A stretch of DNA of 64,000 nucleotides from Hydrolagus colliei (Eukaryota): contig CM068745.1 of assembly GCA_035084275.1 (NCBI GenBank), forward strand, positions 84,506,001 through 84,570,000. Direction: 5' to 3'. The translations under genes and the position numbers were made by a program. Numbering within the stretch: the first letter of the stretch is position 1; every line of letters starts with the position of its first letter. This document shows positions 11,646 to 42,120 of the stretch, piece after piece. The notes beneath the pieces are model-generated. The model was not told where the DNA came from, did not search any database, and saw nothing but the letters and a program-made list of their open reading frames with translations.

Positions 11646-11684
11646 CAGCCACGAAGAGGCAAAGGAGGGAGTGACATTTACCAG
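11646..11684 (+). CDS. CD247: CD3-zeta exon 7: (Q)PRRGKGGSDIYQ
   Basis: ctacctcAG(cAG) / GTagga; 39 or 36 nt; RRGKG motif typical of zeta. Confidence 0.93.
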
Positions 11685-13168: not shown

Positions 13169-13206
13169 TATATACGCTTAATCCCGTATGTTTGTAATTT
13201 TTGCAG

Positions 13207-13284
13207 GGACTGAGCTCCGCTACACAAGATACCTATGACCGCCTGCAAATGCAGCCACTGCCGCCCCCTCCTCCTCGTCACTGA
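13207..13284 (+). CDS. CD247: CD3-zeta exon 8 (last coding): GLSSATQDTYDRLQMQPLPPPPPRH*
   Basis: tttttgcAG acceptor; completes ITAM3 YQGL-x7-YDRL; TGA at 13282-13284. Confidence 0.96.
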   Translation, partial: GLSSATQDTYDRLQMQPLPPPPPRH

Positions 13285-14742
13285 GATTCTGAGAACATTG
13301 TGGAAATATCGAGATGACCAACAATGGAAAAAGCTTTCATCGACTCAATTTCACCGGGACGAGAAGTCAATACTACTCGAGAAAAACATCCATACCAATG
13401 TCACCAGTGTTTGCATTCGCTAGGAAATCAGTTGTGTCCAGTTGTAGAAGGGTTTGTTTTCCAACTCGCAGTATCGTTCTGTGCCAAATTCTGTGGGCGT
13501 CCTTGCCCCCCGCTGTATCATAATATCGCTGATTTTGATGTGACTTGATCAAGATGAGGCAGGGGTTGCCTTGAATGTTTAAAATCTATTTCAAATATTG
13601 CTTTAGCATTTTTTGTATAAAGTCGTGATATAATGCAATGCTACTTCAGGCCCCCAAAATGGATGTAACTTTTAAAAGTAATAATAACAAAAATACAAAA
13701 ACCTGTAGATATACTTACAGTACATACTTTCAAACAGCCTCTGACAGAGCAACCTGGAATCAGAAAACAGTATTGGTTACAATCGTACCAATATGGCTAT
13801 TCATTGAAAGCAAAATGAGATGCGGTGTGAAAAGGTAAATTTGGATAGCGAATTACGGCAATAACAATAGAGGCAAGGAACACATTAAAATGTTGCAGAT
13901 AAGATCTTTTATAGTTGTACAAAATATAACCAACAAATAGTTTACCTCAGCTGTACATAATTTATTGCTACGCCCGAAGACTGGTTTTGAGAAAACCTCT
14001 GTGCAAAAAGTTGAGACTTCAGTACTGCGTGATGCTACTTATCAAAACTCCTATGCCTTCTGTGTGTATGTCTTTTTTATTATTCCACTAAAGAAACAAA
14101 TTACTTGGGAGTGAACATGATCAATCCCGGAAAGCTCTCCGCATCATACATAATAGAAGTGAATACAAGAACGCAGATAAACTAGAATCATTATATATAC
14201 GCTCTTGAGCAAAAAGGCTCCTGAAAGCATTACCAGAAAGCTTTTAAACGTGGGAAGCTTTTAAACGTGGGAAGTATTTATTTTACTCGACGGCCGGTGG
14301 CACTAAAAGCACCAAATTCCTCGGATTCAAATCCTCAGCGATAATTTTTAAATTCACACAATAGAGCTCACTGGTTACATGCTCGGCTTTACAATGAACT
14401 TGCAAAATAGTAATATTCTACCCATTATTTCTCACTTCGCAATTCATACGAAATTGACAAGTAGTTTTTTTTAAAAAATAAATCTTATTTTAATAATACA
14501 ACCCAGCCAGTGTTTTGAAGGTGCACTTATTCTTAAGTGTTGTTTCTGCATTATATGCCAATTTATACCACTGTCTCCTACACATTCAATGTGTCTCCCT
14601 GCATAACTTGAACAAACGTAACGGTTATTTGGCTTATCTGAAACAGTCATTCATTTCATCCGTGTTACACTACGGATAAACAATGATTGAATTAATCCAT
14701 CACATGTTCATCCAGCTTTTGTTTCTCCTTGTGGGAATTCTT

Positions 14743-16369: not shown

Positions 16370-16994
16370 AGTTTGCAGGTATAGCAAACAACTAGGAAGG
16401 CTAATGGCACGTTGGCGTTCATCGCAAAAGGGTTGGAGTACAAAAGTAGGGAAGTCTTGGTGCAACTGTATAGTCTTGGTGAGACCGCACCTAGAATATT
16501 GTGTGCAGTTTTGGTCTCCTAATCTAAGAAAGGACATACTCGCCTTAGAGGGGATGCATTGACCTTTGAGGACATGTTAAGTAAACTAGGCTAATATTCT
16601 CTAGAATATAGATTCAGAGGTGATCTTACAGAAATCTATAAGATTTTTCTATGGCAAGAATAGACAGTGTGAGACTGTTTCCCCTGGTTGGAGAATCTAA
16701 AATCAGGGGTCAGTCTCAAGATTAAGGGTCAGCCTTTTCAAACTGAGTTAAGGAAACATTTCTTCACTGAGAGGGCAGTGAATTTATGGAATTCTCTACC
16801 CCAGAAGGCTGTCGATGCTCAATCCTTGAACATATTCAAGACTGAGATTGATAGTATTCTAAAGGAGGGATTAAGGGAGATAGGGATAGGGCGGGTAAAT
16901 GAAATTAGGTTAGAAGATCAGCCGTGATCTTATTAAATGGCGGGGCAGGCAGGAGGCCGAATGGCCTACTCCTGCTCCTATTTCCTGTGTTCTT
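16370..16994 (+). mobile_element. CR1 LINE 3' fragment
   Basis: [15 protein letters not shown]-like segment, RKHFFTERAVNLWNSLPQKAV, tail ccgaatggcctactcctgctcct. Confidence 0.92.
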
Positions 16995-17010
16995 AATAGA
17001 TTTTACTCAA

Positions 17011-17112
17011 ATTAATAATTCTTGCACTTGATATAGCACTGTATCAAGTCATTGAGACGTCTCAAAGTGATTCACGGAATATACCGCAAAGTGAATCGAC
17101 TGTACATTTTGT
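17011..17112 (-). mobile_element. SINE tail fragment
   Basis: ttcttgcacttgatatagcac..gagacgtctcaaag..aaagtgaatcgactgtac. Confidence 0.8.
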
Positions 17113-17734: not shown

Positions 17735-20700
17735 GCATTTGAAGTCAGATTTTTAATGAACAAGACGTCATTACAAAAATGAATACAAAATGATTAGATA
17801 AAATGACCACATTACAATACAAAAAATCTAGCTGCAATGGAATTCTCTCATGGCAGTTCTTCAAGACAGTTTTATCTGCAGTGACTCACTGTACAATGAA
17901 TATGAATTTGAAAAGAACGTTAAAAAGAGTACCTTAATGCAGACAGAAGCAAAATTGTTAAAGTTGCATTTTTAATACAATTGAGTTAGTATTCCATTGA
18001 TTAACAATAACTATCGCTGTGTATCTGGCTTGATAATAAATTAGGAAAATAAGATTTACTTGGGAATAGATTTTTTTTAAATTAAGGGGTTGGGGGGAAT
18101 AAATTAACACTTCTATGCTCAAATATTTATCCAATGTACAGCAGACCAGGCAAGTAGCCATTAGCATGACTTCAAAACCAGACACTATCGTATGTTAGTC
18201 TGAGAAAATGTGCAGTCATTTATTATCCATTTAAAAAAAAAAACATTTTTCTTTAAAAATCACAAGATAACCGTCACATTTTCACAGGAAAGCTTGCTCG
18301 CTTATTTATACTCTTCACCAGCTAGTTTTGGAGCAGTTTGTTTCATTTTCTGTGGTATGTGTATTCAAGCTCCTAGTTCCAATTCTAAATAGCTACTCAT
18401 CGTCTTCCATTGATTACTTTTCTAAGTGAAGCAATATGGGAAGCGCTCCATCCCGTCGAATAACAAACTACATTTATACAGGGCCTTTCACATCTTAAGG
18501 ACATCTCAAGGCTCTGGGTGCTGTTACCTTGACAAGTCAATTTTTTAAAAAAAATTGAGAATTCAATCAAAAGTTAAAAGATGAAATAGTAACTAGAAAG
18601 CACATAAAAGTGTTGTTGAAAAAACGGAAGTTACAATTTGGTAAATGGCTGTAGTATGACCAAAAGATATTTTGTCCATGAAATCTTCCACAAACTCCCA
18701 ACTTTGAGCTCAATAGTGCTGCTATTTACACTCGGATTAGATTAGTGGAAATTTGCATCTCCCCCACTGATTCGAATTATACATCGAAATTGTTCAACCT
18801 CTTTGAACGTTCCATTAATCGTTAACTTTTTTTTTAAAAAGTAAAAAATGTGATAGAATAGCATCGTTAAAATGTCGGTTAGGGATCACCTTGGCTTTCC
18901 TATTTGGTAACACTTAAAAAACTTACAAACTGCTTCAAAGTTGATGCTGTTCCAAAATATAGGGGGGGCAACAATCGTTCAAATGCTCAACCACTAATGA
19001 AGAGCTAAAATGTGCATTTTGATGAGCAATTTCTAGCTTGCGAGCCAGGAATTCTAATCCATTTTTCATGGTTATCAGTAGTATATTACAAGTCTCTTAA
19101 ACCTGCAAAAATTCATTTCAGTGGTTGTGGTTAAAAATTGGGTTTAAGGATTGAGGATGTGCAACTTTTTAAAAAAAAAAATAATAATAATTTTGATTGA
19201 AAAAACTAAAATGTGCAGCCAGGTCATGAAATCAGTAAACTAAGGAAGGGCTAAATATTCAGCAACAGAAATAACAAAAACACCATCAAATGTCTAAATT
19301 TGCCAAAGTGTAAAATTTAATATCCTGAAAGACTAGTTCTTAATTACAACTTTCCAATGGTTATTCGGTTAATCTTTGTACTTGAGCTAGAAACAATACT
19401 GTATATTTAATGTAAGTTTGTATGGTTATACCAGAACACAGCAATATACAAATCAATGCTTAACAATAATGCCTTACTGTTGCAATGTGTCAGTATACAA
19501 ATTCCAATGATGTGTGCATTCACACCGCAGTTTTATCGTTGGAATTTTTTTTTCAAACAACACACAACTTAATGTCACATTCCTGCTCACAACGCAAGGG
19601 TCGGAGCCATTTTAAGGTTTCCATCACCACTCTTTTATATTAAAAAAACATGCCTTTTATTGGTATGAAAAAATTCACAGTAAAACAATGCACAGCTGAA
19701 CACGACTTAAACTGAAATTGCTGTAATGGTGATAAACAAGACAAACTGCCGTGTTGATGTAACAATTCTGAATATTGGTGCTTCAAGAAGACTTCAGCGA
19801 AAGAAATCTGTAAGGTATTTGAAGTAATACAATTTGTTGACGTAAAGAGGTACACAGTAATTACTCGACTTAGCTTACAATGTTCTTTTCACTCCTCTCC
19901 AGTCCTCACTAGTCAGTTAATAGCTATCAAATGGATAAAATCATTGTAGCTTACATTTTTTTAATTAGACATGTTTGTTATGTTGCTTGCAAATCTAGTG
20001 CTGGTATTGATTTAAAACCACAATGACCATAAGCTATTTGGCAAAGGAAATCAATGTTTTTAATTTATGTAGACTTGTGAGACTAAACATTTGAATCATA
20101 TGAACAGTATTATAAAGTACTTTCCCTTAAACTAGTTAATTTCAGCTACAAATTGTATTACTTCCACTGCATGATTCACTGAATATTTCTCACGCCAACA
20201 TTGTTTAAAACTTGAGTGTTGTGTATTTTTTTGGGGGAAAAAATAGCAGAAATGTGTGGTAATGCTATAGGAAAACAGTCAAACTTTCCTTGAGAATTGT
20301 AAAATCACCACCCGAACCCCCAACTCTCCTGTTCAATCATAAGTCATTTGTTTTGTTTTAAATGTTAAGTTTAACATAAATACTCAAGATTCTCTACAAA
20401 CAACATTGCGAAACAAACATGTCCCAATAGTTAGGGGGCAGCAACTAGAAAATAGATCTGTTTATAGATCTGTTGAGAAAACATCCATTTTAGAGGTCAT
20501 TTTGATAAAGACACTGTATGGGAGCAATGGTGAGGTGAGGATCTGAATTACCAAAACACCACAGCTGCCAGAACACCAAAAGGTTTAATAGATGCTCAAG
20601 ATCAAATTAAATAATAAAAATGCAGCACAGTAGAGTGAAATTTGAATCACTTATTAAGGCCATGTGAAAGGACTGTTTGAACCAAATTAAAACTATTCTT

Positions 20701-23700
20701 GTAGCTGCCTTTGCATGCTGAATGAAGATCTATACACTTCCAAATAGAAAGAAAACAATTTAGAATGACAAGACTTTTACCGAAATTCCTCTGCAAAACC
20801 TCTCGTGCATATTAACGGTCTAACTGGAGGAATTGGGATTACGTACCCAGAGAGAGAAACAAGTTTTGTTGTCGAACGACAGGGAGTTTTAGTCTGCTAG
20901 ATCTTCGTGTCAGGTCATTCTTCAGTTACGTGATCCTTTATATCATTCCGTATACAATTATCATCAAGGAATTTGACTGCTTATTTCCCATGCAAAACAT
21001 TAAAGAGAATATCTCTATGATCCCGCTTTTGTGAATTGTGAGAAGCCTGCGAGATGCCTAGTCTCTACCGAAGCGTTATTCAATCACAACGTTTCACTTT
21101 TTGGGTGTGGGAATGTTTAAAGGGGCTATAGGTGTGTTTTATAAAAGGGACGAACGTGACCAATTAATGAAGACCAGTGTGCACAACCTTGAAAAAAATC
21201 CATCAAAGAGCAATCTCAAATTCCATGAGTTTGAAGCCTCAAGGAAGCTACCTTTCTGAGATAAGCTTCAAACCCTTTACGCATCACATAATCACAGGCA
21301 GCTGTCTTTGTTACCAAAAATCAGAATTTGTGTTAAGACTGGTTTAAAAACCTTCGGACCCCTATTCAGTGCAATTATTGTTCTGTAACGTGCTTGATAC
21401 CCAGTGTATACAGTGGAATCAACAAAGCAGGTGTCACATTTATGAAACTGGGAAAGAAAGAATTTGACTGCTCACATAATCCACCCAGTGTGCTGATTTT
21501 TGCAGTATGCTATGACTTTCCCCGAGTTCTGAAAATATTGGAATGAAATTCTTTGTTCTTTCCATTCAATACCGCCATTCAAATAATCGCAACTATCTTT
21601 GCGGATAGCTATGTTGGTGAAAACAGGATAAGTTTCACACCAATCAATTATGAAAGCAATATATCAACGGGTTGAGGTTCAGTGATTCACATCAAAGCTA
21701 GCATTGCAGCCAATTTCAGCTAATAGCTCATGTGTTTTTTTTGGTGCTGCGGGAACTTTAGTTTTTCACATTTACACCTTGCCCTGCAACATCAAGCTTT
21801 CGGTCTGCCGTTCTGAAAGCTGTGCTGGTAACCTTTAACTTTGTTGCAGCTGACTGGTCAGTTTTGGGGGGGGGGCTTTCTGAAACACTGCTTGGGATCC
21901 CAGCTCTACTCAAAAGTAGCAGCATTGATAGTGCAAAATATGCAAGTAGAACAAAGAGCCTCTGTAATGAATCTTTTAAGAAGTAGGGATATACTGTAGT
22001 AATCTTAATGGTAAATTAAACCCAAACTACAAAGTTGCCAGCACACGTCCGCTGATGGTATGAGCACATCTGACACTTGTAGAAGCAACATTTGCACTGG
22101 TAAAGGTCCGTCATCTCCAACCATCTTCCACAAGTTTGATTAAAAACCAGCATGTGTGTGTACACGCTCAATTATGGTGTTGTATTAAGGTGCACTGGAT
22201 ACAGGGGCGTCCGCAGGTTACTGTGATGCAGTCTTATTATATAAGGAATGTACCACCTTGTGTGGGAACAGTTCAATCCAGTTGAGGACTTTTACATTTG
22301 CACCCACTGAGCTGTTGCACATCTTCACTCAGATAGAATGAATGGGTTAATAAATTATGAAATTTACATTGCTTAGTAACAGTATCCCTCTTTTCTTGGT
22401 CCTACACAAAACGCATGTAAATGACCACCAAAAATCATATCTGCACACCATTTTAAATCAACGATAGCCGCAGTTAAAAATTTCAAATCAAAATTAAAAG
22501 TTTACAGAAATCGTTGCATAATGTAGTTACCGGGCTAACGTTTCAGAAGAGAAATGTTTACAGAAGTACGTTGTAGAATGGTCACACGTAGACTCTTGTT
22601 TTGTTGTTCTGGCCATCCACTGAAATGCACTTAAGAAAGTACCAAGTTCTCTTCCGACTTCTACCTTCTCCTTTAAAAGGCAGTTCAGTGGCAGTCTGAT
22701 CAGACAATGAAGAAGAATACCCTGAATCAAATTGACCAATATAAAATGCAGAAGGGGAAATAACCATACAATATTCATTTTGTAGATCTGCTCTAAAAAT
22801 ATGTAATATATGTCACCCGTTCCCAAAAACATTTTATCGTTGGTCTGTTGAAAATTGTAGGATTCATTTCTTCCTACTGAGGATACTCAAAATTATTGTG
22901 CTATGAATGAATGAGCTGGAATTTGCTTTTCATATTTAAAAAAACTCACGTAGATTTTGTTCATGCAGATATACATTTTTCATACATAAAAAGGAATACT
23001 GTATTGAAAAACTGCATTAAAAAAACACCTTCCAATAAATAGGGAGGTCACACACTTAAAGAACGTAAGCCTGCGGACGTCCAAAACTGGATATGTACAC
23101 TTGTAACTATGAACAACTAGGCAGTGAAAAACAGTTATGTTCTCACACACAAAGACACACCCAAAAACATACAAAAATACTATATCTTAAACTACCAAGT
23201 AAGACAATTTAATTTTTTTTTATCTCATGCCATGATTTAAGAGCAATACACTGAAACGAACAAGGATTTGACAACAAAAAAAAACTTTTATCCCAGAAAT
23301 ATACCAAAATATACATCTAAGCTTTGGAATTACTGAGGTTAGACTAATGCCTGCTGGGTAATTGCCTTTAATACACAATTCTAAGGTTGCGAAGAAGAAA
23401 TAAATCTTTGGTATCTGCATTAGGCGAATGTTAACATTTGGATTTTGCTTTGGGATAGAGCTTGTATGATCCTACAACCCCCCATGTAGTACTCAAAAAA
23501 AAATCACTGGACACAAAAAAATCCATCTTTCTCCACACAAAAGTACTCTGGAGTTTCTATCTAGCACAAGGTTGAGGAATATAATGCATAGTCGCACAGT
23601 GGTATTATGAAAAGAAGATGAAACCTTTGTAAGCAAGCTGCAACCTTTATAGTCCATTTTTCTTTTGCAAAATGAAACGGCAGCTTCCAGCCACTTCCAG

Positions 23701-26700
23701 CCAGTTTTGAAGAGCACCTCAGTGTGTATTAATCCATATCACCCAGCCCACAAAGTGATGCCCCAAAGAGGAGCCAATCCTACCACTGCGATGGTCCCCA
23801 GTCGTTTGACCAATCAAATAACACATTGGGCTCCACTTTCAGTTGCTCCTCTGAGTCTTCAGAGGACAGTGCAAAGCACAATTCTTTTACTTTCCAACTC
23901 TCGTCACGGTAAGCAATTCACACTTTTGAAATAAGATTAGTGTAGGACTGAAGACTTTTCTTTAAAAAAAATTATTTTTAGCTCATACAATCATTAGTAA
24001 GTCTTTGGTTTTATCAGCACAATGTAAGGTTGCTGGCATGTAGCAAAAGCACTGAGCATGGCAGGAACAGCCATCACTAACATTTACATTCAGAGAATGA
24101 GTGCTATTCTCAGGGTATTCTTAATGATGGGCATAATACCCGACCCGATCTGATACAAGATTGTCAAAGTTGAACAGCATTTTGTTAGTAACAATCACTA
24201 TTTGGCTACTGATACGAATGTGCAATAGTCTGGACTTGGAATCAAATACATCTGAGGGAGGTGAAGCCCATGGAGAATTCCTCCACTAAGATGACTGTAA
24301 ATGGGCACATTAGGAGAGTTTAAATGTGTTTCCCAGAGGACACAAAAAAGCACATTTAATTTGCAACATTTTTTTGCATTCAAGTGTGGCCTGTGGAGTT
24401 GCCAGCGAAACGGTGAAATTCCGATTGGAAATAGAAACAATAACTCGAGTGTTGGGCTGAGGGCCCGAGAATTTAGTTATTCAGCTGCTTTTTCGAACAA
24501 GTCGGTAAAAACTCAGCGAGTCAAATAATCAGCCTGTAATTTCATCTCTCATCTAAACAGGATTAGCAGTTTGGCTAACTTTAGAAGAGGGGTGTGGGGG
24601 GGTAATGATGCGAATGACGAAGGGAAAGGAAATTAAAAGAGTTAAGGAATTGCAATATGCCCATTGTTTAAGAGTTTAGTTGTCAAATTTGACTGTTGTT
24701 ATTCTCCTGCTATGCCAGTGATGATACATGCCAGATTTTTTTTCAAAAAGTACAGTCAGTGGGCAGGTTCAGCCACTCTGAGGGGGAGAAGATTAAAGTG
24801 AGTTACTCAGTCACGAGTTAAGAAATGAGGTATACAACAGCTCCTGTACCCACAGCAAATGGTAATGACCACCCATTTTAAGCAAGAGGAAGAAAATGAA
24901 ATAGTCATGCCTAGTGACTGACTCGGGACAGTACCAAGTTCATTCCAATTAGAAGTTTGGCAAGATCCTCGAATAAGGGAACAAAAAAAATCGGCACGCG
25001 AGGATCATTTCCCCCTTTTCCCCAGAATTTTTCATCCACCAAAGTTCCGTGAAATTTTGCTGCACTGATTAGCGAAATCCAACTTCAGATAAACACCATG
25101 GCAGAGGGCACAATCAACTCTCACGGCAGCTTGCAAGGCTACCCCACACCCCCTTTTTCTCTCCTTGGTGACAACTGGAGTCGGACTCCAACACTGTATC
25201 ACAATATAGTTGTTAAGATAGTATGTACACCATGATTCGGGGTATCCCAATCTACTGATAAAGGGGGACACTGGTTAACTAGCCACTTATACTGCAGGCT
25301 TGGCATTTCTTTACTTGAGTGACAAGTCTCTTCCAAACTCAGTTGAAATAATTTGTCACTCTCAATTTCCGTGGGGTATAATTAATCTTTCATTTTTTTT
25401 AAAAAAAACGGTTGAAATTGAAACAGTGATTGTAGTTTTTGCTGAAAAAAATCAGTTCTATAATAAAAAAAAGCAGCGATACTTTGATTGATCTATGCCA
25501 GACATGATACATTTACATCATACGGAGTAAAAAAAAGGCTAACCTGTAACCTGTGTGGGTATTTACAGCAGACATGAGAATAAATTTTGTTATGAGATTT
25601 CATTTTCTTCCTCAGATTTCCTTCAATCATTAATTTACTGTACAACCTGATCTACGCCTTTGTTCCAAGTGCTCTCCTTACACAACTGAAATGGATTCAT
25701 CAAGATTTTTTTTTTTTCTTTTTACATCTTTCTCTCCAAGACAACATAGCTCTTTACAGAAAAGAGTCCCTAAAATGAGAATCAGTTCTACCTCCACAAA
25801 CCACTTGGGCAAAAGTCTTCTGGTTAAATCACCACCTTATTTTCATAATTCTCAATTTAGTCTGTTGCTAATTTACTTACTTCAATTCAATATTTCACAC
25901 ATTCAACGACTGAGCCATCGGATTGATTGATTTATCCCCTCCCCTTAATCCCTTCATTATTGTAGCAGTACATTGGCCCCGAACAGTTTTATGTGATTAT
26001 AATTTTGAGATGAAAGCAGAGGTTGCTTTTGTAGATTTGATGAATTCTTTGGAACAGGTGTGAGGACTAATAGACAAAATATGATTTCAGAACAGAGAAC
26101 ATAGGCCTGCTCAAAAGGGAGCCAAGGAAATACAAAGAGTTAATACTGGTTCATAAGGCTGCACAAACTCAGCAGCTAACCCTAACAATCAGTCAACGGA
26201 AATTTATTTTGCTTTCTTCGACAGCTTCCCTATGAATACAGGATGGAAGCGAAAGCAATAGGAATTTTGAAAATACCCATTGCTGTTTGCATTTACCATT
26301 AAATGACGTGCACGACTGACACCTATGAGCCGCTCATCTACTTTATGTGCTTATTTTACATCTGTATAAAACTTTGACCAGCAGTACAAATTGCTATTCC
26401 ATACCTCAGAGGTTTCCAAGGGAATAAATAGTGAAGTGTTTGAAATTCCCTTTCATTTAACTGAACATGAAAACACAGAAATGTGATTACAGCGCAGTAA
26501 TAGAAATGATATGTTCAGAGTATAATTGTAGTAGTTTTTCAGGCTCCGGCATCGCCACCATTTATATACGTATCCATTTTATAAGAAAACGCTGGGAGTG
26601 TGTCAAAGAAAGCATAATAAGAAAAAAAATGGCTCAGGCGTTCATTGCTTCCTTAAATTGGAGTAAGCTGCAACACTTTCATCGGGCGTTTCACTTAACG

Positions 26701-29700
26701 TATCTAGAGCTGGGCGATGTTTTGCAAAAAAAACGCATAAGGAATGAACAAAAAATGTCAGAACATTTCAAGTTTCTTCGCACGACGTGGCCTTATGGGG
26801 GAGGGCAAAAGAATGAAAATGCTTTATGGCAGACTGGTTACTATAGCAACACAGCTACGATCTATCCTCCAAATCTTTTCGTCCCGTTACCTCATATGGT
26901 ATTCAAACCCGTGGAGCAATTTAGTGGCTGGTAATTTAAAAAAATAAAAAAAAAGTCCAATAGCAATGAATGTCCAGATTCAATCGGGTGTGTGGAATAA
27001 AGGGTATGATGGCATAAAGGGTATGATGGCTGTTCTTTGTTTTTTGTAAATCCTGTTGTCTGAACAAAATGAAAATAGTAACAGGAGTAGTCTAGCCCAA
27101 GAAGAACTAAATCTCCTGATGGCAGCCTGTAAAATTACACAAGCGGTGAAACATTTTATCGTTAGGGCTATCATGCCTTCATAACCGGTTAACTCACTTG
27201 AAATTTGTTGGGAGTAGCCATGGGAGAAGAACGATGAAAAACAAAACAAGATCAAATATGTTGTTTGAAACTGGATTTTTTTTTGTTGAGTGCGCAGATA
27301 TTGGAAATGAACCAAATTAAAGTTGCCTGCCAAAAATAAACATTCACTTAAAAATCCTTAGAAACTCAACTTTTTTTGTTCATCCTTATACAAGTTGCAA
27401 TGTAAAGCAGTTTGGTAGGCATTGCTCCAATATCACCTTCGTGAGAATAAATGGATGGGTATTTTTGTTGTCTAGCTCCATCAGTCTTCAGTGGAGAAGT
27501 TTAGTAAGATATTGTATCGCCCAACCCTAGTAGTATCCTGAATTGACCATACATAGCATTAACACTGACCAACATTATCAGTCAAGCATAAATGCTACAC
27601 TATTATTGATCTATGTACTGGTAATGATTTTACTGCTAATGATAAAGGGCACGGAGGTGTGGGTAGACTGTAACATTGCTGCAGCCTTCAACCAGAAGAT
27701 TTAATTGCCCGCAGCACTGTCCAGTCTTCAAATAACTTTGGCCAATAGCGCTGAACTAATAATGAAAATATATCAAACAGGTGACACTAATTACGGCAGC
27801 CACCTGCCTCGGAAAGCAGCCCTTCGAACTGAGTGAGTGGAAACATTTAAGGTGTGCAATATAATTAAATTCTCGATATTTTACCGATGTGGCGAATAAA
27901 ATTACATTTAAATGGTGAAAACACAACAATATTCCAAAATATAATCAGTTACTTTGAGGGTTGCATTAAATTTTAAATGAGAAGGCAAAACAAATGAAGC
28001 CCAAAACCCCAATTCACAGAAGAAATAGCCAAAGATCTTGCAGGTAAAAAAAACACAGATTAACTGTGCTGGTGGCAATTATATCCAGATGAGGTTACCA
28101 ACACAGTTACTATTTGGCATAAAGCTGCAATCAATTACCAGGACTTTTTGAACTGATTCCCTGTATGACTCTGATGCAACAAGATAAAAACATGAAGAAA
28201 AATATATTGCACACCCTAATATTTACCATTGAAAAGTCAAACCATGCCACCGATGATTCAAAACCACATCTGAACCCAATATGTGGGTCTAAAATGTCTG
28301 CTGAAACCATCTATGGTGCACCCCCTAGTTTGGTGACTTCTGGTCACAACTAAACAAACCGCAGCAAAAATTCTAATTCCGCCAACTGGATGCAAAAGGG
28401 AGAGCTATGATAGTCATATCATTTACTCCCAGACATCAACCAAATGCCCGGGGCCAACCTCAACCACTTATCAATACAACTGTTCTTTGATCAGTCAAGC
28501 AGGTGCAAGGAGCAGGATATATTTTTGGTCTAGATTGAATTATTTAGCATTGCTATCAACAACAATAATAATACGAAGTTAAAAAATTACTCAGCTATTA
28601 GTGTGACAAACACTACATTCAGTTTACAACACAAATAAAACATTTTCACTTTCTCCTTTTAGTTTTAGAAAACATCATTTCTATAGTGGAACCCTCCCCA
28701 TCCCAGATACTGTTGATCTAACCCCTTTCTAACAAATGGCCAGTGAAACAGTACTGTACTGTTCAGAAATGTAGAAGAGCTACAATACAAATCTTGACTA
28801 GGTTAAAACAATGAGATGAGGCATGCTGAAACTCAGGCCACGTTATAAATTGATCGAGTTGCGAAAGAAGGAGTTTCCTTTGGCAAATAGAATCACAAAG
28901 TGATTTGACTTTTTTCTTTCTTTAGGAATCGACATCACCCTTTTTTTTTATTAAAAGAACTAAACCCATAACCAAAAATTTTGTTTCCTAAATTTTTTTT
29001 ATATATATATACAGAATATCACCCAAGAATCAACATCTACATTCTAAATCTACAATCATATCCAACAGGAAAAGTTTTTGCGTTTGCAAAGCAAGCCTGT
29101 AATTGCTAAGCGATGCTGAGGTATTTTTTTTAATATGGAAAGATTGCAATGATGAAAAATTTTGCTCAGGTTCTACTTATAGGGTCCAAGACCTATCTTG
29201 TTACTTCCCAATGAAAATGTTTGCACAGCTAATGTTTCTTAGAAAATTAAAGTTCATAAATGCAGTGGATAATATTGGCAAACAATGCTGCAATGTGATG
29301 AATTAAACAGATGGGCAATGTCGGACTTTGAATCCTTCATTTACATAGGGTTCACTCAGGAACCATTCAATACAACATAGTTGTATTCAGCTGAAAGGCC
29401 AAATAGTGCGACTGCTACATGAAGCTCAATCGAAGTTCAGCGTTGCAATGGGCCAGGTTAAGTTTCACCCTCTCATTTCAAAGGTGGGAGTATTCTGGCA
29501 TGGTGCTCATGAATTTGTTACAGTTGTAATAAAAAGTATTGGTGACAACCAGTAGAATAGAGAAATAAAGATTATTTCTTCATTTTTACTCCTGGGTCAG
29601 ATTAATGAATCAAACCAAAACATGCATAGCACTGTTCTTGCGTGTCAATGGATTTTGATAGAATTTGTTCTCTAAAGCAAGTTTTTAGTTCAACAGTGCT

Positions 29701-32700
29701 TTCTCATATTGTAACGAGTAAAGATGAAAATGGCAGAGGGCTGAATTCTGCAAACAATTGTATAACATCATACAGAGTCAATTTAAATCTGTTGTTTTTG
29801 CAGTGGGTTTAAAGAGAGACTACATACTGCCCCATTAGTTTCAACGTCAATCCAAGGTTGAATGGCCCATTGGCACTCATGGTTTGACATATAAATTCAT
29901 GGTATAACAATGGCACCCAGAATGTTAAGTAGAAAAAAAAATGGCTATGGAGTGAAAAGAGGAGAAAGAATAGAGTAATTACTGTCATTATTTTCAGCAG
30001 CACATCGATTGATCTTAAAATGTAGAAAAGCAGACTAGTCCCAGAGGCAAAAAAATCCCTCATGTGAGTCTGAGGATCGATCGTTTGTTACGACATTGAT
30101 CTTGTCTCCAGATAAGAGGTCAAATTGAAGTTAAAAACAAAAATAACATAGACCAAAATTACCCACTGCATCTGCACTTAATTTATCAGAAACAAATGAA
30201 AGTTTTTGAAAGTTAAATTCGTATTAAAGATGTATGAAAGTGTTAAGTATGTTTTATTGGCAGAATTCTAAATCAAAGTAACTTTTGTCAAATCTCCTGA
30301 TTATTAGCTATCAGCTAGTTATGGTGGCAAAATGTGATAATGCTCTTGAATTAGAACTAGTCAAAAAATAAAATATTATCATCCTGCATCTTAATTCCCC
30401 GTATCTTAAACTGAAATGTAATGTACCTGCATGTTTAATGTACATCAACATTATCTTAGTCTTGGCTTCTGATACTCCAAAATATATAATGCATTCGTAA
30501 CATGAGAAATAGAAACATCACACGATTAGATTTATCTAAATGTGACGAGAGCGTGACAGATCCGAGTTAATGTTAGAATGAAACTCTTTCGCTTTCTGCG
30601 TGTCTTCAAAAAACAGAATTTGCACCAACAAACAGAGGACCAGTTGTGGTTATAGAGACAAAGAACTGTATTGAAATTGCATGGCTTTCAAAGATTTCTG
30701 ACTTAGCTATATTTGAACTCATGTCTTGCAAGTGATTGGATAGCCTTGAACGCAATGATGTGGCTAGACCTTTAAAAAATATAAAAATTTCAAAGTTTGG
30801 GTAAGCGAACTCATGATCATTGTAAAAATCGAGCAAGTTTCATTTCTAAAAATTCTCTCCTGGCCCTATTGTGAATAAATACTGCATCAATTTTAAAACA
30901 ATTTTGATGAAGGAAGTTTTACATTTGCTTTAGGAGGTTTCGAAAGATGGGCAAAACAATCCGTGAAGATCAAATTTATGGTTACTTTTTAGTAAATGCA
31001 CTTCCAGAATTTTCAAAACGTACTTTTTCCGACAATCTAACAAATAATCCTAGCATTTGATATAGAGTGGATTATTATACAATATCTTCCCACTCTTCAT
31101 TCCTAGTTTTGTTTTCAAATGTTTCTGAACTACAGGTAGCTAAAGTGAATTCAGTAAGCTGAATAATATGTTAAAAGGTCGATTAAATTAATTACCAAAA
31201 TTTACGTCAAGGAAAGATTCATAAACACGTTTTCTTCTATTAAACGTACGGACAGCGAATGACTCAGTTCAATTGACCAGTGTGAATTCAGGATAAATAA
31301 CTATCAAACTTTGTGTTCACCAGTTACCCAAATAGCATAAAGTGTTGTTAAAAAAAGGATGGAAAATTCATCTAAGCCTATCAATACCTTGTGTCACAAA
31401 ATCCACTGACATCCCCTCATCATTGGTGCAAATAGAATTGGCTAGTTCTAATTTGTACAAGAGCATATGAAATAAAATCACATTTTCTCCCCTCACTCCA
31501 ATGTCCTACCAACTAAACAATACTTTCCTTTGCAACAGATTGGTACGGATTGCCCTTGTAATAATATATTGACCCTCTGAGTACTACAGATTAGAATTTA
31601 TCAACTTTATCTTCGGTCTTAAATAAGGCTGTAATGGAGTATCAACATTTTGTTTGTGTGAACTGGTTTAATCAGGTAAAAGATTCACGTCAGCTATATT
31701 TTTATCAACAAAAATCTATAGCTGAATTTCCAGACCCAATCCAGTTCTCTACCTTGGCTGATGACTTCTTACTTTGTGTTCGAATTGAAACAGTTATATC
31801 TTATAGTACTTTCTTGTGTCACGCTTTATAATATTTGCCATTTATGGAGCAAGTTGTTCTGCTAGAAACACAAGTTGTCCCAGAAATCCTAAATAGGTCC
31901 TCAAAAGGGTTCAAAGATATTAACGAATGCAACTCAAGTTCAAGTCAAATTTACTCACTATTTTGACAGAAGTCCCTTATTCTGTGAAAGCTGCCAGCAA
32001 CCACCATTCTTCCACTCCGTGGGAAAATGGATTGAAGCACCAATACAGTTCAGCATTGGGCAGCCCCTCCTTAAAATCAATTTATTTAGACAAGATGGTC
32101 TCAAACATCTTACTGTTTTAAGTATGCAATGATAATGCCAAAGTCTGGAGTTTAAACTATACCTGGTCTAAAGGCCATTAAACTCTAGTATAGAATTTAG
32201 TCGCTTATTTTTAAAATATATTTGGCGGCATTATAGTAGGTTCCAAACGGAGATATCAGCTGGACAGATATCTCAACCTCATCTGACCTGGGCGGTTGCT
32301 GGAAGCACAGAAAAACGGGAGAAACACTTTCACATTTTCGCCATCAGAGAAATAAGGGACTTCATTTGTAACATCTGATCAATCACACTTCAGAGGAATA
32401 TTCTTAGGTCTAGAATAGTTGGAATATTTTTCCAAAGTGTGCGATCTTACCCCCCAGTGAGAATTCTATATTATTTTACAGTTCTGCGACACAGAACTGG
32501 TTTGCTGTCTCCAGTACACTTGTAACAACAGGTTGAGAAGCCAGCAGACAACTCCTGCATCAGAACACTTCTGGCAATTCCAACACAATGTGTCACAATA
32601 TCCGTTCTGCACAACTTAACACTCGTAGGACCTGTATATCTTGAAATAAAGTCTTCAACCCCCGTAATATCACTGCAACACCAGCCCGTATTAGGTTGGC

Positions 32701-34643
32701 CAGCCAGTTTCAATTGCCCAATGAAAACTGGCTACACCAGACTCTTGGCTACTTTGCAACAACATGAAGTCCAGGTTTGAAGATTCCTTACCTGCAAAAC
32801 TATACTTAAGTAGAAAATAGCAAGTTTTCCTTATATGAACAGTAGCAACTAAATTACTGATGCCTATTAACTGCACTCATGCAAACAATGTCATTGGTAC
32901 AGCAGCTAGGTAAAACTGACTTTGGTTCAAGCTTTAATAGCTGGCCATATTTGGTAGGCAGCCATATTCATTTTGTTTGCAGTTTGGTAGTGTAAGAGTA
33001 CCAGAACTGCAATTTTTATGCCTTGAAAAGGAGATGATTACAGTTTCTGACAATGGGGAAAAAAGGTGTCTGTCTTTTTTTTGAGTTGAATCAATTGATT
33101 TAATTGCACCTGGTTGCTGTTACTTCCACAAAGTACCGCACCGGTTACACAGGTTTCAATGGCAAAATAATTTTAATAGCCAGTTAGCTAAAGCCAATAT
33201 ATGCGTCGTCTAAATATAGCACTAAGGTGGCTCCTATATCCAGCAATAGAGCACAGGGAAATTCAGATAAACAGATAACTGTTTTTAGCATATTATTTGT
33301 TATGTGATCAGTTATGGGTTCATAATGAATCACCGTATGCACAATTTCACCCCAAAATTGTACCCCTCCATGGGCAATCGGGTGTTAAGTCCATTTGTAA
33401 ATGATGATTCAAGCTGTCGTTAATAGCTTGGTTATCAGTACCACCGTGGCTGCCTCTTTCAGAAAAATGACAAACACCATTTTACTCCATATGAACTGCA
33501 AATGCGCTCCTCCAGTCCTTTAATATTTGGTTTCAATACGGTGCACGCTTACAGCAATGGGTCAAGCCATACTGTGCATACTGTAAGCCGCATGTCTCAA
33601 AATAACCCTATTTTCCAATACAGACGAACAAACTCCAAACTGAGCCAACATTAGATATGTTATGAGGCTCTAAGGAAACGTACATTATCCAGTTTCTATA
33701 AGTAAAGCGGTTTCTGGAAACTGGATAATCAATTTTCCTATCAGAAGCCTATATCGCCTTTTTATGATTGGCCTAGTTTGGATTGCGGTTTGCTCATTAC
33801 TACCATCTTCCACAATGATTCCGACTGATTCTCTAGTATTTGAGTCGACAAAAACTTCACAGGGTAACGTATGATCCACATACGATAAAGTCTCCATTTC
33901 CAGTTGTTCTGCCATGTGGATCAGTATTCCTGGCGGCATCAAATCTGTTGTTATTATCCAACCACCACGTTTAGGTAGGACAGACATTCTGATCTTAAAA
34001 ACAAGTATCATTTGAAAAACCACCAGTCTGTGAATTTTTGTCTAGACTTATCTATCCTTGCATCTTTCCTACAAATTAACCGACAGTAAACCACATTATA
34101 CAAACGGTGCATAAATCTACAGTGTACCCGACAAAAAAACCAACCTTTTTCTTTGAAAGGAAGCCATTCCAAGAGACGTTAGCAAGAAAAAAACCCATAA
34201 AAACCTAATTTTCTTAACGGTATACACAAGAAGAAAACAAATGCACAAGTACAGGCCTGCCTAAACTGTACCAGTTAAAGAAACCCATGCTATTTATACA
34301 TGATATAAACACCTTTATGAAACAAAAAGGCCTGTACAACAGACCCAATTAAAATAAACACACAATTAAAAAAAGAACTAATAAAATAGATACTAAGAGG
34401 AGACAGAACCCTTGCCTATGCATTGTTAATGACTCCTATATTGTTACGACCGTCTGAAACGATAAATATTCACGTGTTTTCTTTTTTGGTAGAAGTCTTT
34501 TTTTTGTCATATGTGACACAATCCTGAAAAACAAGCAGGTTAAAAAAAATTAGGCAAAAATATCAAGTTTTGCTTTTTGCTGGAAGCAGCCAAATACACA
34601 TCCCATCGCTGGATCGGACGACCCCCACTCCGGGAATCGCATC
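17735..34643 (-). other. POU2F1: Putative very long POU2F1 3' UTR (distal end uncertain)
   Basis: Directly follows stop; AT-rich; no retroelement seen 18520-34640; candidate signals ATTAAA 23213-23208, AATAAA 18224-18219, ATTAAA 17757-17752. Confidence 0.5.
18462..18515 (-). mobile_element. Decayed L2 3' tail (last recognisable repeat before the repeat-free block)
   Basis: aacaaactacatttatacagggcctttcacatc..ggacatctcaagg resembles 48109-48160. Confidence 0.65.
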
Positions 34644-34942
34644 TCACTGAGCCTTGGTGGTGCTGGTGGCCCCACCTGCCGAGGTCACGGTGAACGAAGG
34701 GTTCTGACTGGAATCAGCCGACATAGAGGTCATCTGGAGACTGGCGGTGTGTCCGGTGGCCCCGGCAGCAGAGACCAGGCTTACGGCTGGGTTGCTGGTG
34801 AGCAGGGATAGGTTCTGCGGGTTCAAAAAAAGTGGGCCGGTCACGATGTTTGGATGGCCCCCCTGGTGAGCTGCGTTGGCAAACAATAGATTTCCACTGG
34901 CATCAAACGAGGTTATAGGAAGGGACCCACTGGATGCAAGTG
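34644..34942 (-). CDS. POU2F1: Oct-1 last coding exon: [23 protein letters not shown]...[12 protein letters not shown]...TTKAQ*
   Basis: ttctcctcAG acceptor; TGA at 34646-34644; C-terminal KAQ as in Oct-1. Confidence 0.97.
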
Positions 34943-35058
34943 CTGAGGAGAAAAGAAAGAAAACAAATGAGAATTTAACAAAAAAATAACAAATGCTCTG
35001 AATTGAAGAATGCATTCTTGTACCTTCAAAGAAATGTTGCTAATGCGATAGTAATCCA

Positions 35059-35275
35059 TGCATTTGATTTAGCACATTATCACGTCTCAAAGCGCTTCAC
35101 AGAACACACAACAAATCACAATTATATTTATAGAGCGCCTTTCACGTCGGGAGGATGTCCCAAGGCGCTGGAATATACTGTAAAGTGAACCGGCAGTATG
35201 TTTTGTGGGCGAAACGCGGCAGCCAACTGTGCACAGCAGTGTCCCACAAACAATCATGGATTGAGTGACCAATAT
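35059..35275 (-). mobile_element. SINE 3' part with nested L2 (family A) tail at about 35108-35170
   Basis: SINE tail, then atttatagagcgcctttcacgtcgggaggatgtcccaaggcgc, then SINE body resumes. Confidence 0.85.
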
Positions 35276-35707
35276 ATGTACTACTTTTTGCTGCAGGTAA
35301 GCTGCAGTGCAATGCATCTTCAGCAAAACATCGATGCAAAATGAATAGTGGATTTGGTGAAAATGATTTAAAATGAGTCTGTCTGAAAGTGATCAAAAAG
35401 TTATGCTATCATCCTCTCGTCTTATACACTGGAATGTGTAAATTCCAGAATAAGATACTATTATCAGTACAGTGTGACATCACAAACCCACTATTTGTAG
35501 CTACAATTCGGTTATAAGATGGTTGTGTCATTCACTGTGCGCACATTAAAATAGAGGTGATTGGGTCTCTGCCATCATCACTTCCTGTACCCTGTTGTAG
35601 CTACAGCACACAGCAAGTTAAATTGGGGGCAACCTCATGGCATGCAACAACAAAATTACATGTGGACTGTGTAGCACTTTTCATACTGTGAGGTTGTTCC
35701 AAGGCGC

Positions 35708-36497
35708 TAGGGTCCGTCGATATGGAAAATTTTCCGATTAGATATATCGATGGGCTCATATTGAGATATACCAAAATATCGATATTTTCCGTTTTTTCGT
35801 ACTGCGCATGCGCGCGTGCATTCGGGGTGCGCGCGCATTCCAGGCCTATCTTCTCAGGAGGTAAATATCTTTCTCTCTCTGTGTCTCTCACTCTCTCCAT
35901 CTCTGTGTTTTTCTGTCTGTGTGTCTCTCTCCCTCTCTCCTCTCTCACATCCCCCCCATCTCTAACTATCTGTATATTATCACATCCAACCCGTCTCTCC
36001 AAACCACCACCCCCGCCGTCCCTCTCTCGTAACCCCCACCCCCGTCGTCTCTCTCCCCCACCACCCCAGCCGTCTCTTATCCCTTCCCCCCCCCCCCCCC
36101 CCCGCCGTCTCTCTCCCCTTCCCCCCAGCTGTCTCTCTCCCCCTCTCCCCCCCAGCCGTCTCTCTCCCCCCCTCCCCCAGCCGGATCTCTGCCCCTCTCA
36201 CACCCCCAGCCGTCTCTCTCCCCCTCACCCCCAGCCGTCTCTCTCACCCCCCAGCCCTTGCATACCTGTTTATTGTATTCGAGGACTGTGAATACAATAT
36301 GGCGGCTTTGCACCTCGGTCTGTGCATTGTGTATAGAGATGAGCATTCTGGGTCTGTTCAGTGTGCTCGCATCCCGATTTTTTACCTCGATATATCGTTT
36401 TTTCATCATATCGATATTTTTAAAATGTCTATATCGGCGTATCGATATGAAAATTATATCGGGTTTTAGTGATATATCGATATATCGCCAGACCCTA
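35708..36497 (+). mobile_element. Non-autonomous hAT-type DNA transposon (MITE), 790 bp
   Basis: TIRs TAGGGTCCGTCGATAT / ATATCGCCAGACCCTA; 8-bp TSD caaggcgc (35700-35707) / caaggtgc (36498-36505); subterminal ATCGAT/ATATCG repeats. Confidence 0.88.
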
Positions 36498-39033: not shown

Positions 39034-39102
39034 CTAAAAGATCAGTGACACGTGAGAATTCTAATGTGAAATTTGATTTGTTTTTTCAAAAAAGAATTCT
39101 GA

Positions 39103-39395
39103 TAATATTTCTTGCATTTGATACAGTTCTTTTCGTGTCTTCTAGACGTCTCAAAGCGCTTCACGGAATATACTGTAAAGTGAATTGACTGTATATATGT
39201 GGGCGAAACGTGGCAGCCAATTGTGCACAGCAGTGTCCCCCACAACCAGTTGTGGATTGAAATGACCAATTTTTTTTGTGTGGGATTATTGTTAGTCATG
39301 TGGAGTAAGAAAACTTGCCCAAGGTTTCACCCTGATTGGAATTGAACCCGGGTCTCTCGCTTGTAAGACGAGTGCTCTAGCCACTGAGCTACCTC
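39103..39395 (-). mobile_element. Full-length tRNA-derived SINE (short variant)
   Basis: Head, body and tail all recognisable. Confidence 0.92.
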
Positions 39396-41914: not shown

Positions 41915-42120
41915 CAGTAAACCAAGGTCCTGTCTGCTCGTTCAGGTGGATGTTAAAGAACCCACGATACTTCAATCCTCCAGTTAAAATTAATCATTCA
42001 CTCATTGTGGTGGTTTGTAGGACATGGCTACACACAAATTGGTTGCAGCGTTCACCTATAGTCACTATATTTTACAATAATTACAGTGAAACACTGAGAT
42101 GTTGTGATACGATGAGACAC
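41915..42120 (+). mobile_element. Older DeuSINE (SacSINE1-like) remnant
   Basis: taaaccaaggtcctgtctgctcgttcaggtggatgttaaagaaccc and aaattggttgcagcgttc resemble the Deu domain as recalled. Confidence 0.6.

What the first reader, a model, noticed from the sequence alone, without database searches (positions are those of the whole stretch)
17735..34643. About 16-17 kb retroelement-free block: candidate giant POU2F1 3' UTR
Seen: the rest of the window has a recognisable SINE/LINE piece roughly every 1-2 kb (longest gaps about 3-4 kb), but none was found from about 18520 to 34640. The block starts exactly at the Oct-1 stop, is AT-rich with many U-tracts on the - strand, and ends in terminal-looking contexts (AATAAA 18224-18219; ATTAAA 17757-17752 after ttgtattcatttttgtaat). 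Known: mammalian POU2F1 has a multi-kb 3' UTR. Inference: an even longer, insertion-intolerant UTR with tandem poly(A) sites (also ATTAAA 23213-23208).
Basis: partly seen in the sequence, partly recalled or inferred. Interest (0 to 1): 0.7.

Follow-up and report, generated by a model that had tools for sequence, protein, structure and literature searches.

The report
Long conserved repeat-free Oct-1 3' UTR

Summary
The window comes from a holocephalan. Its Oct-1 is 97% identical to that of Callorhinchus milii. The 3' half of POU2F1 lies on the - strand, with the stop codon at 34646-34644.

No in-window repeat lies between 17113 and 35046, a gap of 17.9 kb, while the next largest gap is 4.1 kb (P about 1e-5). 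The only exception is a 38-nt SINE relic at 18475-18512.

From the stop down to 23108 the sequence is collinear with the region downstream of POU2F1 in other vertebrates:
- Bamboo shark: 43% of bases aligned.
- A second cartilaginous fish, a frog and a non-human tetrapod: shared blocks.

Conservation ends sharply after a 365-nt core (23472-23108) that is 83-84% identical to the tetrapod sequences. Both tetrapods carry AATAAA or ATTAAA exactly at that end. CD247 (CD3 zeta) follows tail-to-tail in the tetrapod and in the window (stop at 13285).

An 11.5-kb UTR that tolerates few insertions is therefore well supported by comparison. No RNA data were available. The distal 23.1-17.7 kb has no conservation evidence, and its lack of repeats is not unusual on its own. 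It may be an extended isoform (candidate sites near 19.3 and 17.75 kb) or simply spacer. The feature is ordinary in kind.

The parts
34644..34943 (-). Last coding exon of POU2F1 (Oct-1), ending ...[10 protein letters not shown] with TGA at 34646-34644
   Evidence: Translation. Homologues carry Pfam PF19536 POU2F1_C. The spliced 644-aa product is 97% identical to Callorhinchus milii POU2F1.
23108..34643 (-). Conserved core of the POU2F1 3' UTR (about 11.5 kb), free of repeats
   Evidence: Collinear alignment chain to the 10 kb downstream of the bamboo-shark stop codon: 43% of 25100-34643 aligned, against 12% of the exon-intron part, which is almost all coding exons. Frog blocks at 34391-34231, 32934-32840, 24850-24793 and 23479-23108. 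L007 blocks. No repeats found.
32585..34643 (-). Proximal UTR segment, conserved without a break from the coding exon
   Evidence: A single 2,487-nt HSP at 75.7% identity to Chiloscyllium plagiosum spans the exon and 2 kb of UTR. Frog and L007 share 34507-34226 and 32934-32840.
28222..29235 (-). Mid-UTR conserved segment
   Evidence: 73.8% identity over 1,033 nt to the shark. L007 shares 29127-29076.
23108..23781 (-). Terminal conserved block of the UTR. Its core, 23472-23108, is 79% identical in all four species, and conservation stops abruptly after ...CACTGCCTAGTTGTTCATA
   Evidence: Alignments A1-A3. The core is 95% identical to L011, 83.5% to frog and 84% to the tetrapod L015. The adjacent coding exon is only 64% identical to frog. 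L015 has AATAAA twice and frog has ATTAAA exactly at the block end.
23208..23213 (-). ATTAAA, followed at about 23180-23143 by a conserved GU-rich run. This is the candidate chimaera poly(A) signal and would give an 11.45-kb UTR
   Evidence: Context (downstream G+U 80%). The hexamer lies in an A-run found only in the chimaera; L011 has GATAAA and the tetrapods have no equivalent.
19316..19509 (-). Weak candidate homologue of the tetrapod distal poly(A) element (19509-19358), plus ATTAAA at 19321-19316 with a GU-rich downstream sequence. It would give a 15.3-kb UTR
   Evidence: This is the best local alignment of the frog/L015 second conserved element among 510 windows on both strands (score 27 and 25; mean 14.6, SD 2.9; next best 23). 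Heuristic site ranking. Inconclusive.
17752..18224 (-).
   Evidence: There is no comparative or transcript evidence for or against their use.
18475..18512 (.). Old SINE core relic inside the distal part of the block
   Evidence: nhmmer match, E 1e-3, alignment shown.
16373..17112 (.). Interspersed repeats that bound the block on the CD247 side
   Evidence: 16373-17027 matches three places in the shark locus. SINE fragment at 17010-17111.
35047..35288 (.). SINE copies in the last POU2F1 intron that bound the block on the gene side
13204..13285 (+). Last coding exon of the convergent neighbour CD247 (CD3 zeta), GLSSATQDTYDRLQMQPLPPPPPRH*. It sets the outer limit of the tail-to-tail spacer
   Evidence: tblastn and translation. 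The same convergent arrangement occurs in the tetrapod locus L015, 3.2 kb after the conserved block.

Best explanation
The block is the terminal exon of POU2F1 (Oct-1) on the - strand of a chimaera genome. From the stop codon (34644) to about 23100-23200 it is an 11.5-kb 3' UTR inherited from the common ancestor of jawed vertebrates. It carries many constrained segments. It ends in a 365-700 nt block that lies directly upstream of the ancestral cleavage and polyadenylation site.

Transposon insertions into such a long, densely constrained terminal exon would disrupt regulatory sites or bring in premature poly(A) or splice signals. They are therefore removed by selection, and this leaves a transposon-free region.

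The remaining 4.6-6 kb without repeats (23100 down to 18513 or 17113) is the start of the tail-to-tail spacer towards CD247. It may be transcribed as a minor or lineage-specific extended isoform through sites near 19.3 kb or 17.75 kb, but this is not shown.

Shown: the lack of repeats, gene identity, collinear conservation, the sharp end of conservation, the hexamers at that end in tetrapods, and the CD247 synteny.
Inferred: that the conserved stretch is transcribed as one exon, that purifying selection against insertions is the cause, and which site the chimaera uses.
For: Gene identity and species:
- POU and homeodomain exons, and the POU2F1_C terminal exon.
- 97% identity to C. milii POU2F1.

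Lack of repeats:
- A 17.9-kb gap against a next-largest gap of 4.1 kb, P about 1e-5.

Conservation:
- One HSP runs from the coding exon 2 kb into the UTR at 76% identity to bamboo shark. The collinear chain covers 43% of the 9.5 kb that can be compared, against about 12% (almost all coding exons) in the 29 kb of exons and introns.
- Collinear blocks in frog out to 23108.
- 80% identity over 1.2 kb to a second cartilaginous fish.
- 71% over 735 nt to a non-human tetrapod.
- The terminal core is 83-84% identical to the tetrapods, more than the last coding exon.

The 3' end:
- Conservation stops at the same base in four lineages. It is followed by two AATAAA in L015 and by ATTAAA in frog, and a shared TGTACATA lies about 30 nt further on.
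- The CD247 last exon lies tail-to-tail 3.2 kb beyond the block in L015 and 9.8 kb beyond it in the window.

Other species and literature:
- The orthologous shark region is also poor in repeats (2.6% against 17.5% self-repeat).
- Transposon-free regions over 10 kb at transcription-factor loci, kept for more than 450 My, are documented (PMC2241635).
- Human POU2F1 is listed among genes with CFIm25-dependent alternative polyadenylation (PMC8682989).
Against: - No transcript data for this species were available, so 'UTR' rests on comparison alone.
- The chimaera has no canonical hexamer at the ancestral site. Its nearest ATTAAA (23213) is lineage-specific, and conserved sequence continues 100 nt past it.
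- Sense-strand AATAAA is depleted in the chimaera block (6 against about 15 expected, P 0.004-0.008), but not in the orthologous shark or frog regions. This signal is therefore not robust.
- The shark tolerates one insertion within its first 10 kb.
- Repeat detection used only in-window copies and shark copies, not a species library.
Confidence: 0.78

Rival explanations
1. One reading: the whole 16.4-16.9 kb from the stop to AATAAA 18224 or ATTAAA 17757 is the main POU2F1 3' UTR in this species. The 23.2-kb site would be a minor proximal site or unused.
For: - There is no canonical hexamer at the ancestral site in the chimaera.
- ATTAAA 17757 has four UGUA motifs upstream and ranks first under my unvalidated context heuristic.
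- U>A skew (+25 per kb, z about 2.5) and excess of U-tracts (32 against 19) continue through 17-23 kb.
- Sense AATAAA occurs 2 times against 5.4 expected there.
- Only one short SINE relic lies in the stretch.
Against: - There is no conservation with frog beyond 23108, and a sharp common end of conservation in four lineages.
- Nothing in 23.1-13.3 kb aligns with the tetrapod spacer, apart from one weak candidate match at 19.5-19.36 kb.
- A repeat-free stretch of 4.6-6 kb is not unusual here (P 0.10-0.37).
- The skew also persists beyond the poly(A) site in L015, so it is not diagnostic.
- The AATAAA deficit there is not significant.
Confidence: 0.25
2. The block is a transposon-free cluster of DNA-level regulatory elements (enhancers or insulators for POU2F1 or CD247), not mainly a transcribed UTR.
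For: Transposon-free regions are described as extended regulatory DNA (PMC2241635). No RNA evidence was available here.
Against: - Conservation is contiguous with the coding exon in one alignment.
- It ends exactly where the tetrapods have poly(A) hexamers on the POU2F1 sense strand.
- The composition is strand-asymmetric (U>A) in all five species.
- Introns of the same gene carry almost no such conservation.
Confidence: 0.06
3. The distal part of the reader's interval (about 17.7-19.7 kb) belongs to a long CD247 3' UTR on the + strand and not to POU2F1.
For: - CD247 ends at 13285 on the + strand and must terminate somewhere in 13.9-20 kb.
- In L015 an AATAAA on the CD247 strand lies directly beside the second conserved element.
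- The weak chimaera match to that element is at 19.5-19.36 kb, with a + strand ATTAAA at 19639.
Against: - That element keeps two ATTAAA and UGUA motifs on the POU2F1 sense strand in both frog and L015, and conservation ends 20 nt after the second hexamer.
- A 6-kb CD247 UTR would contain several transposons.
- Nearer + strand signals exist at 13884 and 14477.
Confidence: 0.12
4. The gap is an artefact of incomplete repeat detection or chance.
For: Only in-window multi-copy families and repeats shared with the shark could be recognised. Single-copy old LINE or DNA-transposon fragments would be missed.
Against: - P about 1e-5 for the gap.
- 43% of the comparable part aligns collinearly to the shark orthologue, which excludes lineage-specific insertions in those parts.
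- No Pfam hits in the ORFs.
- The abundant SINE family is absent even at E = 10, apart from two short matches.
Confidence: 0.03

Closest known systems
The long 3' UTR of mammalian POU2F1 (Oct-1)
   Same: Same gene, with a terminal exon carrying a multi-kb UTR. CD247 lies tail-to-tail downstream; this arrangement in human is from my memory, and it was shown here for a non-human tetrapod. Human POU2F1 is listed among genes with alternative polyadenylation (PMC8682989).
   Different: I could not check the mammalian UTR length or sequence with these tools; I recall it as roughly 11 kb. The chimaera lacks a canonical hexamer at the site the tetrapods use, and its spacer to CD247 is three times longer (9.8 kb against 3.2 kb).
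Transposon-free regions (TFRs) of vertebrate genomes (Simons, Makunin, Pheasant and Mattick, BMC Genomics 2007, PMC2241635)
   Same: More than 10 kb without transposon insertions, at a transcription-factor locus. The orthologous shark region is also poor in repeats. Much of the sequence cannot be aligned between distant species.
   Different: Here most of the region coincides with one transcribed feature (a 3' UTR) rather than flanking regulatory DNA. TFRs were defined with full RepeatMasker annotation, which I could not reproduce. The shark orthologue has one insertion.
Deeply conserved 3' UTR elements and ultraconserved elements
   Same: The 365-nt core is 83-84% identical between chimaera and tetrapods, and more conserved than the neighbouring coding exon.
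   Different: The longest run identical in all four species is 26 nt, far short of the 200 bp of perfect identity used for classical ultraconserved elements. Its function is unknown.
Tandem alternative polyadenylation with extended 3' UTR isoforms
   Same: The tetrapods carry two conserved sites about 0.85 kb apart. The chimaera has several plausible sites at 23.2, 19.3 and 17.75 kb.
   Different: Which site is used was not measured. The match of the chimaera's distal sites to the tetrapod one is weak.

Membership tests
POU2F1 (Oct-1) orthologue | POU-specific domain plus POU homeodomain, encoded in collinear exons | tested here: met
   Exons at 50410-50219, 47985-47812, 47105-46944 and 45836-45647. 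Full-length homologues carry PF00157 and PF00046.
POU2F1 (Oct-1) orthologue | POU2F1-type C-terminal region, and best matches to POU2F1 rather than POU2F2 or POU2F3 | tested here: met
   All hits to the terminal exon carry PF19536 POU2F1_C. All of the 120 hits listed for the spliced protein that carry a descriptive name are named POU2F1 or 'POU domain protein', none POU2F2 or POU2F3, and the best is 97% identical to C. milii.
POU2F1 (Oct-1) orthologue | Conserved synteny with CD247 downstream, tail-to-tail | tested here: met
   CD247 exons on the + strand at 3192-3308, 11652-11684 and 13204-13285. Same arrangement in the tetrapod L015.
3' untranslated region of an mRNA | Starts at the stop codon and is contiguous with the last coding exon | tested here: met
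   A single alignment to the shark spans the exon and 2 kb downstream. No comparative break occurs at the stop.
3' untranslated region of an mRNA | Ends at a cleavage and polyadenylation site (hexamer plus a downstream U- or GU-rich element) | tested here: inconclusive
   Met in the tetrapods at the block end. In the chimaera only a lineage-specific ATTAAA lies 105 nt upstream, with a GU-rich run after it. Other candidates are at 19321 and 17757.
3' untranslated region of an mRNA | Present in mature polyadenylated transcripts | not testable with these tools
   No RNA data for this species. The Logan contig L011 covers 2.4 kb of the distal UTR in another cartilaginous fish, but whether it derives from RNA or DNA is unknown.
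Transposon-free region (TFR) | At least 10 kb without any transposon-derived sequence | tested here: met
   16.5-17.9 kb without repeats detectable from in-window and shark libraries. A full species library was not available.
Transposon-free region (TFR) | Orthologous region also transposon-free in other vertebrates | tested here: inconclusive
   The shark downstream 10 kb is 2.6% self-repeat against 17.5% in the gene body, but it has one insertion at L012 109055-109311, and gaps of similar size occur in the shark introns.
Classical ultraconserved element | At least 200 bp of perfect identity between distant species | tested here: not met
   The longest run identical in all four species is 26 nt. 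The core is 79% identical in all four over 343 columns.

The most novel reading that the evidence does not exclude
In holocephalans the ancestral poly(A) hexamer at the end of the conserved block has decayed. Most POU2F1 mRNA would then read on to sites near 19.3 or 17.75 kb, giving a 15-17 kb UTR, among the longest known in vertebrates. In addition, the 365-nt terminal core, kept at over 83% identity for about 450 My and more conserved than the adjacent coding exon, would be a distinct RNA module that controls poly(A) site choice, stability or localisation of Oct-1 mRNA in all jawed vertebrates.
Probability: 0.25. Interest if true: 0.45.

Novelty: new member of a known kind. Interest (0 to 1): 0.3.

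Why it matters
The result shows that the very long 3' UTR of Oct-1, its terminal conserved block and its tail-to-tail arrangement with CD3 zeta predate the split of cartilaginous and bony vertebrates. It also gives a concrete explanation for one transposon-free region, namely a constrained terminal exon. This helps genome annotation of chimaeras and sharks, where long UTRs are often cut short. It also points to a small, sharply bounded element whose function could be tested. It does not change what is known about how such regions arise.

Tried and rejected
- Searching the terminal-exon ORF against the protein collection found no sequence from the same species or a close relative. No transcript contigs of this species could therefore be retrieved.
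- Loci for Stegostoma (not on record), Pristis (gene range 132 kb) and Rissa (110 kb) returned no DNA. Only Chiloscyllium plagiosum did, and its 10-kb flank stops at the equivalent of about 25.1 kb, short of the terminal block.
- The compact loci L003-L006, which I take to be teleost from their small introns, share only coding exons.
- Sense-strand AATAAA depletion looked promising in the chimaera but is absent in shark and frog. I do not rely on it.
- The A-T skew domain (16-35 kb) matches the repeat-free block. The same skew continues beyond the poly(A) site in L015, so it cannot delimit the transcript.
- Counts of Pumilio, ARE and CPE motifs are too small to be informative.
- No CD247 exon lies within the 2.6 kb beyond the frog block.
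- Rfam and ARAGORN found nothing in the block.
- Literature searches did not return a statement of the POU2F1 UTR length or of its conservation. The two transposon-free-region papers I checked do not mention POU2F1 or UTRs.
- My poly(A)-site context score is an unvalidated heuristic and is used only to rank candidates.
Full report
**What the window is.** The window has no N stretches. The 3' half of POU2F1 (Oct-1) lies on the - strand. Its exons are at 54201-54007, 53296-53165, 52371-52240, 50410-50219, 47985-47812, 47105-46944, 45836-45647, 39858-39745, about 39030-38650 and 37948-37853. The last coding exon is 34943-34644 and ends in TGA at 34646-34644. Homologues of the terminal exon carry Pfam POU2F1_C. 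A 644-residue product spliced from these exons is 97% identical to Callorhinchus milii POU2F1 and 87-90% identical to shark and ray POU2F1. The 19 differences from C. milii are scattered along the protein. The species is therefore a holocephalan other than C. milii.

**The observation.** Self-BLAST found 42 repeated intervals, none of them between 17113 and 35047. Most belong to one ~318-bp SINE whose head is tRNA-like. A profile of that SINE found only two matches inside the block: a 38-nt core relic at 18475-18512 (E 1e-3) and a probable chance match at 31041-31067. The gap of 17,935 nt compares with next-largest gaps of 4,074, 3,514 and 3,371 nt. With 32-40 insertion events placed uniformly, P is 5e-6 to 7e-5. 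The 114-kb bamboo-shark locus, used as a further repeat library, gave multi-copy matches at 38512-38183, 17027-16373 and 8703-8338. Inside the block it gave only collinear orthologous matches. The ten longest ORFs of the block have no significant Pfam match, and there are no notable tandem repeats. The - strand is U-rich with an excess of U-tracts. The block starts at a SINE in the last intron (35047-35288), not at the stop. Its far edge is the relic at 18475-18512 or the transposons at 16373-17112.

**Comparative evidence for a UTR.** Five comparators were retrieved:
- A frog locus, Ranitomeya imitator (L002).
- A genomic contig that I take to be from a tetrapod, because its terminal exon is close to the mammalian one (L007).
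- The bamboo shark Chiloscyllium plagiosum (L012).
- A 2.4-kb contig of another cartilaginous fish, found through a chance ORF across the conserved core (L011).
- A non-human tetrapod contig, found by scanning metagenome contigs with a 24-mer of the core (L015).

Against the shark, one alignment of 2,487 nt at 76% identity runs from the coding exon 2 kb into the downstream sequence. Further collinear segments follow, including 29235-28222 (74%), 26776-26595 and 25956-25548. In total, 43% of the 9.5 kb that can be compared is aligned. In the 29 kb of exons and introns the figure is 12%, almost all of it coding exons. The frog shares collinear blocks at 34391-34231, 32934-32840, 24850-24793, 24011-23972 and 23479-23108. 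L011 is 80% identical over 24294-23091. L015 is 71% identical over 23781-23108.

**Where the conserved UTR ends.** The four-way alignment shows a core at 23472-23108. It is 79% identical in all four species, and the chimaera is 83.5-84% identical to the tetrapods there. This exceeds the 64% identity of the adjacent coding exon to frog. Conservation stops at the same base in all four, after ...CACTGCCTAGNTGTTCATA. Immediately after that point L015 has AATAAA twice (its only sense-strand AATAAA in 7 kb) and the frog has ATTAAA. A shared TGTACATA follows about 30 nt later. This is the pattern expected of an ancestral cleavage and polyadenylation site with a conserved upstream element.

The frog and L015 also share a second element 0.7-0.9 kb further on. 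It has UGUA motifs and two conserved ATTAAA on the POU2F1 sense strand, and its conservation ends 20 nt after the second hexamer. The tetrapods therefore appear to have tandem sites.

**The neighbour.** CD247 (CD3 zeta) lies on the + strand of the window. The transmembrane exon is at 3192-3308, another exon at 11652-11684, and the last exon at 13204-13285, ending ...DTYDRLQMQPLPPPPPRH*. In L015 the CD247 exons lie on the opposite strand, and the last one is 3.2 kb beyond the conserved block. The convergent arrangement is therefore ancient. It caps the POU2F1 tail: the distance between the two stop codons in the window is 21.4 kb.

**What the chimaera does at its 3' end is not settled.** It has no canonical hexamer at the ancestral position (GTTACAAG). 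L011 has only TTTAAA there. A strongly GU-rich conserved run follows it. Use of this site would give an 11.45-kb UTR.

Further downstream there are three sets of candidates:
- 19509-19358 is the best match in the whole window, on either strand, to the tetrapod distal element, but only narrowly (27 and 25 against a next best of 23).
- Next to it, ATTAAA 19321 has a GU-rich downstream sequence.
ATTAAA 17757 has four UGUA motifs upstream and ranks first in my unvalidated context score.

**Evidence bearing on the distal 23.1-17.7 kb.**
For inclusion in the transcript:
- U>A skew of +25 per kb, against +39 per kb in the core and about +5 per kb in the flanks.
- U-tracts 32 against A-tracts 19.
- Sense AATAAA 2 against 5.4 expected.

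Against, or neutral:
- No similarity to the frog or L015 sequence beyond the block, apart from the weak match above.
- A repeat-free stretch of 4.6-6 kb is not unusual in this window (P 0.10-0.37).
- An old SINE relic lies in it.
- The U>A skew continues past the poly(A) site in L015 and the frog.
- The AATAAA deficit of the chimaera block (6 against about 15, P 0.004-0.008) is not seen in the orthologous shark (14 against 10.5) or frog (12 against 5.9) regions.

I therefore give about one chance in four that a major isoform reaches 17.7-18.2 kb.

**Mechanism.** Most likely, a long terminal exon packed with constrained segments cannot accept transposon insertions without losing regulatory sites or gaining premature poly(A) or splice signals. 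Insertions are removed by selection. The orthologous shark region is likewise poor in repeats (2.6% against 17.5%), although it has one insertion in a non-conserved stretch. This matches the published class of transposon-free regions at transcription-factor loci, maintained for over 450 My (PMC2241635). Human POU2F1 is listed among genes whose 3' UTR length responds to CFIm25 (PMC8682989). Transcription of the region, the identity of the regulators that bind it and the selective cause are all inferred.

**Verdict.** The outer third is unproven. The feature is a new example of known kinds: a long conserved 3' UTR and a transposon-free region. The sharply bounded terminal core, conserved across jawed vertebrates, is its most interesting detail.

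Noticed in passing
window 3192-3308, 11652-11684, 13204-13285 (+ strand): Exons of CD247 (CD3 zeta), convergent with POU2F1. The transmembrane exon is 56% identical to human, and the last ITAM exon ends ...QDTYDRLQMQPLPPPPPRH*. The other ITAM exons were not located.
   Followed up: partly
L015 3950-4153 and L002 21153-21357: A second element shared by the frog and the other tetrapod (81% over 208 nt), 0.7-0.9 kb beyond the POU2F1 terminal block. It is UGUA-rich and has two conserved ATTAAA on the POU2F1 sense strand. In L015 an AATAAA on the CD247 strand lies right beside it, so it could serve either gene.
   Followed up: partly
window, about 25-30 copies, e.g. 56731-57048, 39096-39394, 62878-63183, 2338-2714: One ~318-bp tRNA-derived SINE family dominates the repeats. 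From memory, its core resembles the Deu-type core of shark and coelacanth SINEs. Within the POU2F1 introns about 12 copies lie in the gene's orientation and 5 in the opposite one.
   Followed up: partly
window 5872-6395 and 35994-36257: G-rich and C-rich minisatellites. The first gives long spurious ORFs with a repeated GRECGWEGVWLGGS unit. The second lies in the last POU2F1 intron, next to the repeat 35707-36027, which recurs at 42120-42407.
   Followed up: no
window 62204-61661 and 54990-54787 (- strand): Two further segments in the POU2F1 gene body, conserved with the bamboo shark (66% over 555 nt and 76% over 211 nt). They are not among the exons I defined and could be upstream coding exons or intronic conserved elements.
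   Followed up: no
L011 2336-2374: The Logan contig of the second cartilaginous fish ends in a Nextera adapter (CTGTCTCTTATACACATCTGACG) 35 nt after the conserved block, with no poly(A). I could not tell whether the run is RNA or DNA.
   Followed up: no
proteins P0003, P0006, P0017: Several gene calls in the protein collection read through the Oct-1 stop as ...KAQW..., meaning TGA was decoded as tryptophan. This is an artefact of the gene caller's genetic code on vertebrate contigs.
   Followed up: no
L012 109055-109311; window 16656-16989: The single repeat inserted in the bamboo-shark POU2F1 downstream region belongs to a family that also occurs at the edge of the chimaera block and twice in the shark introns. 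It is an interspersed family shared by, or similar in, sharks and chimaeras.
   Followed up: no
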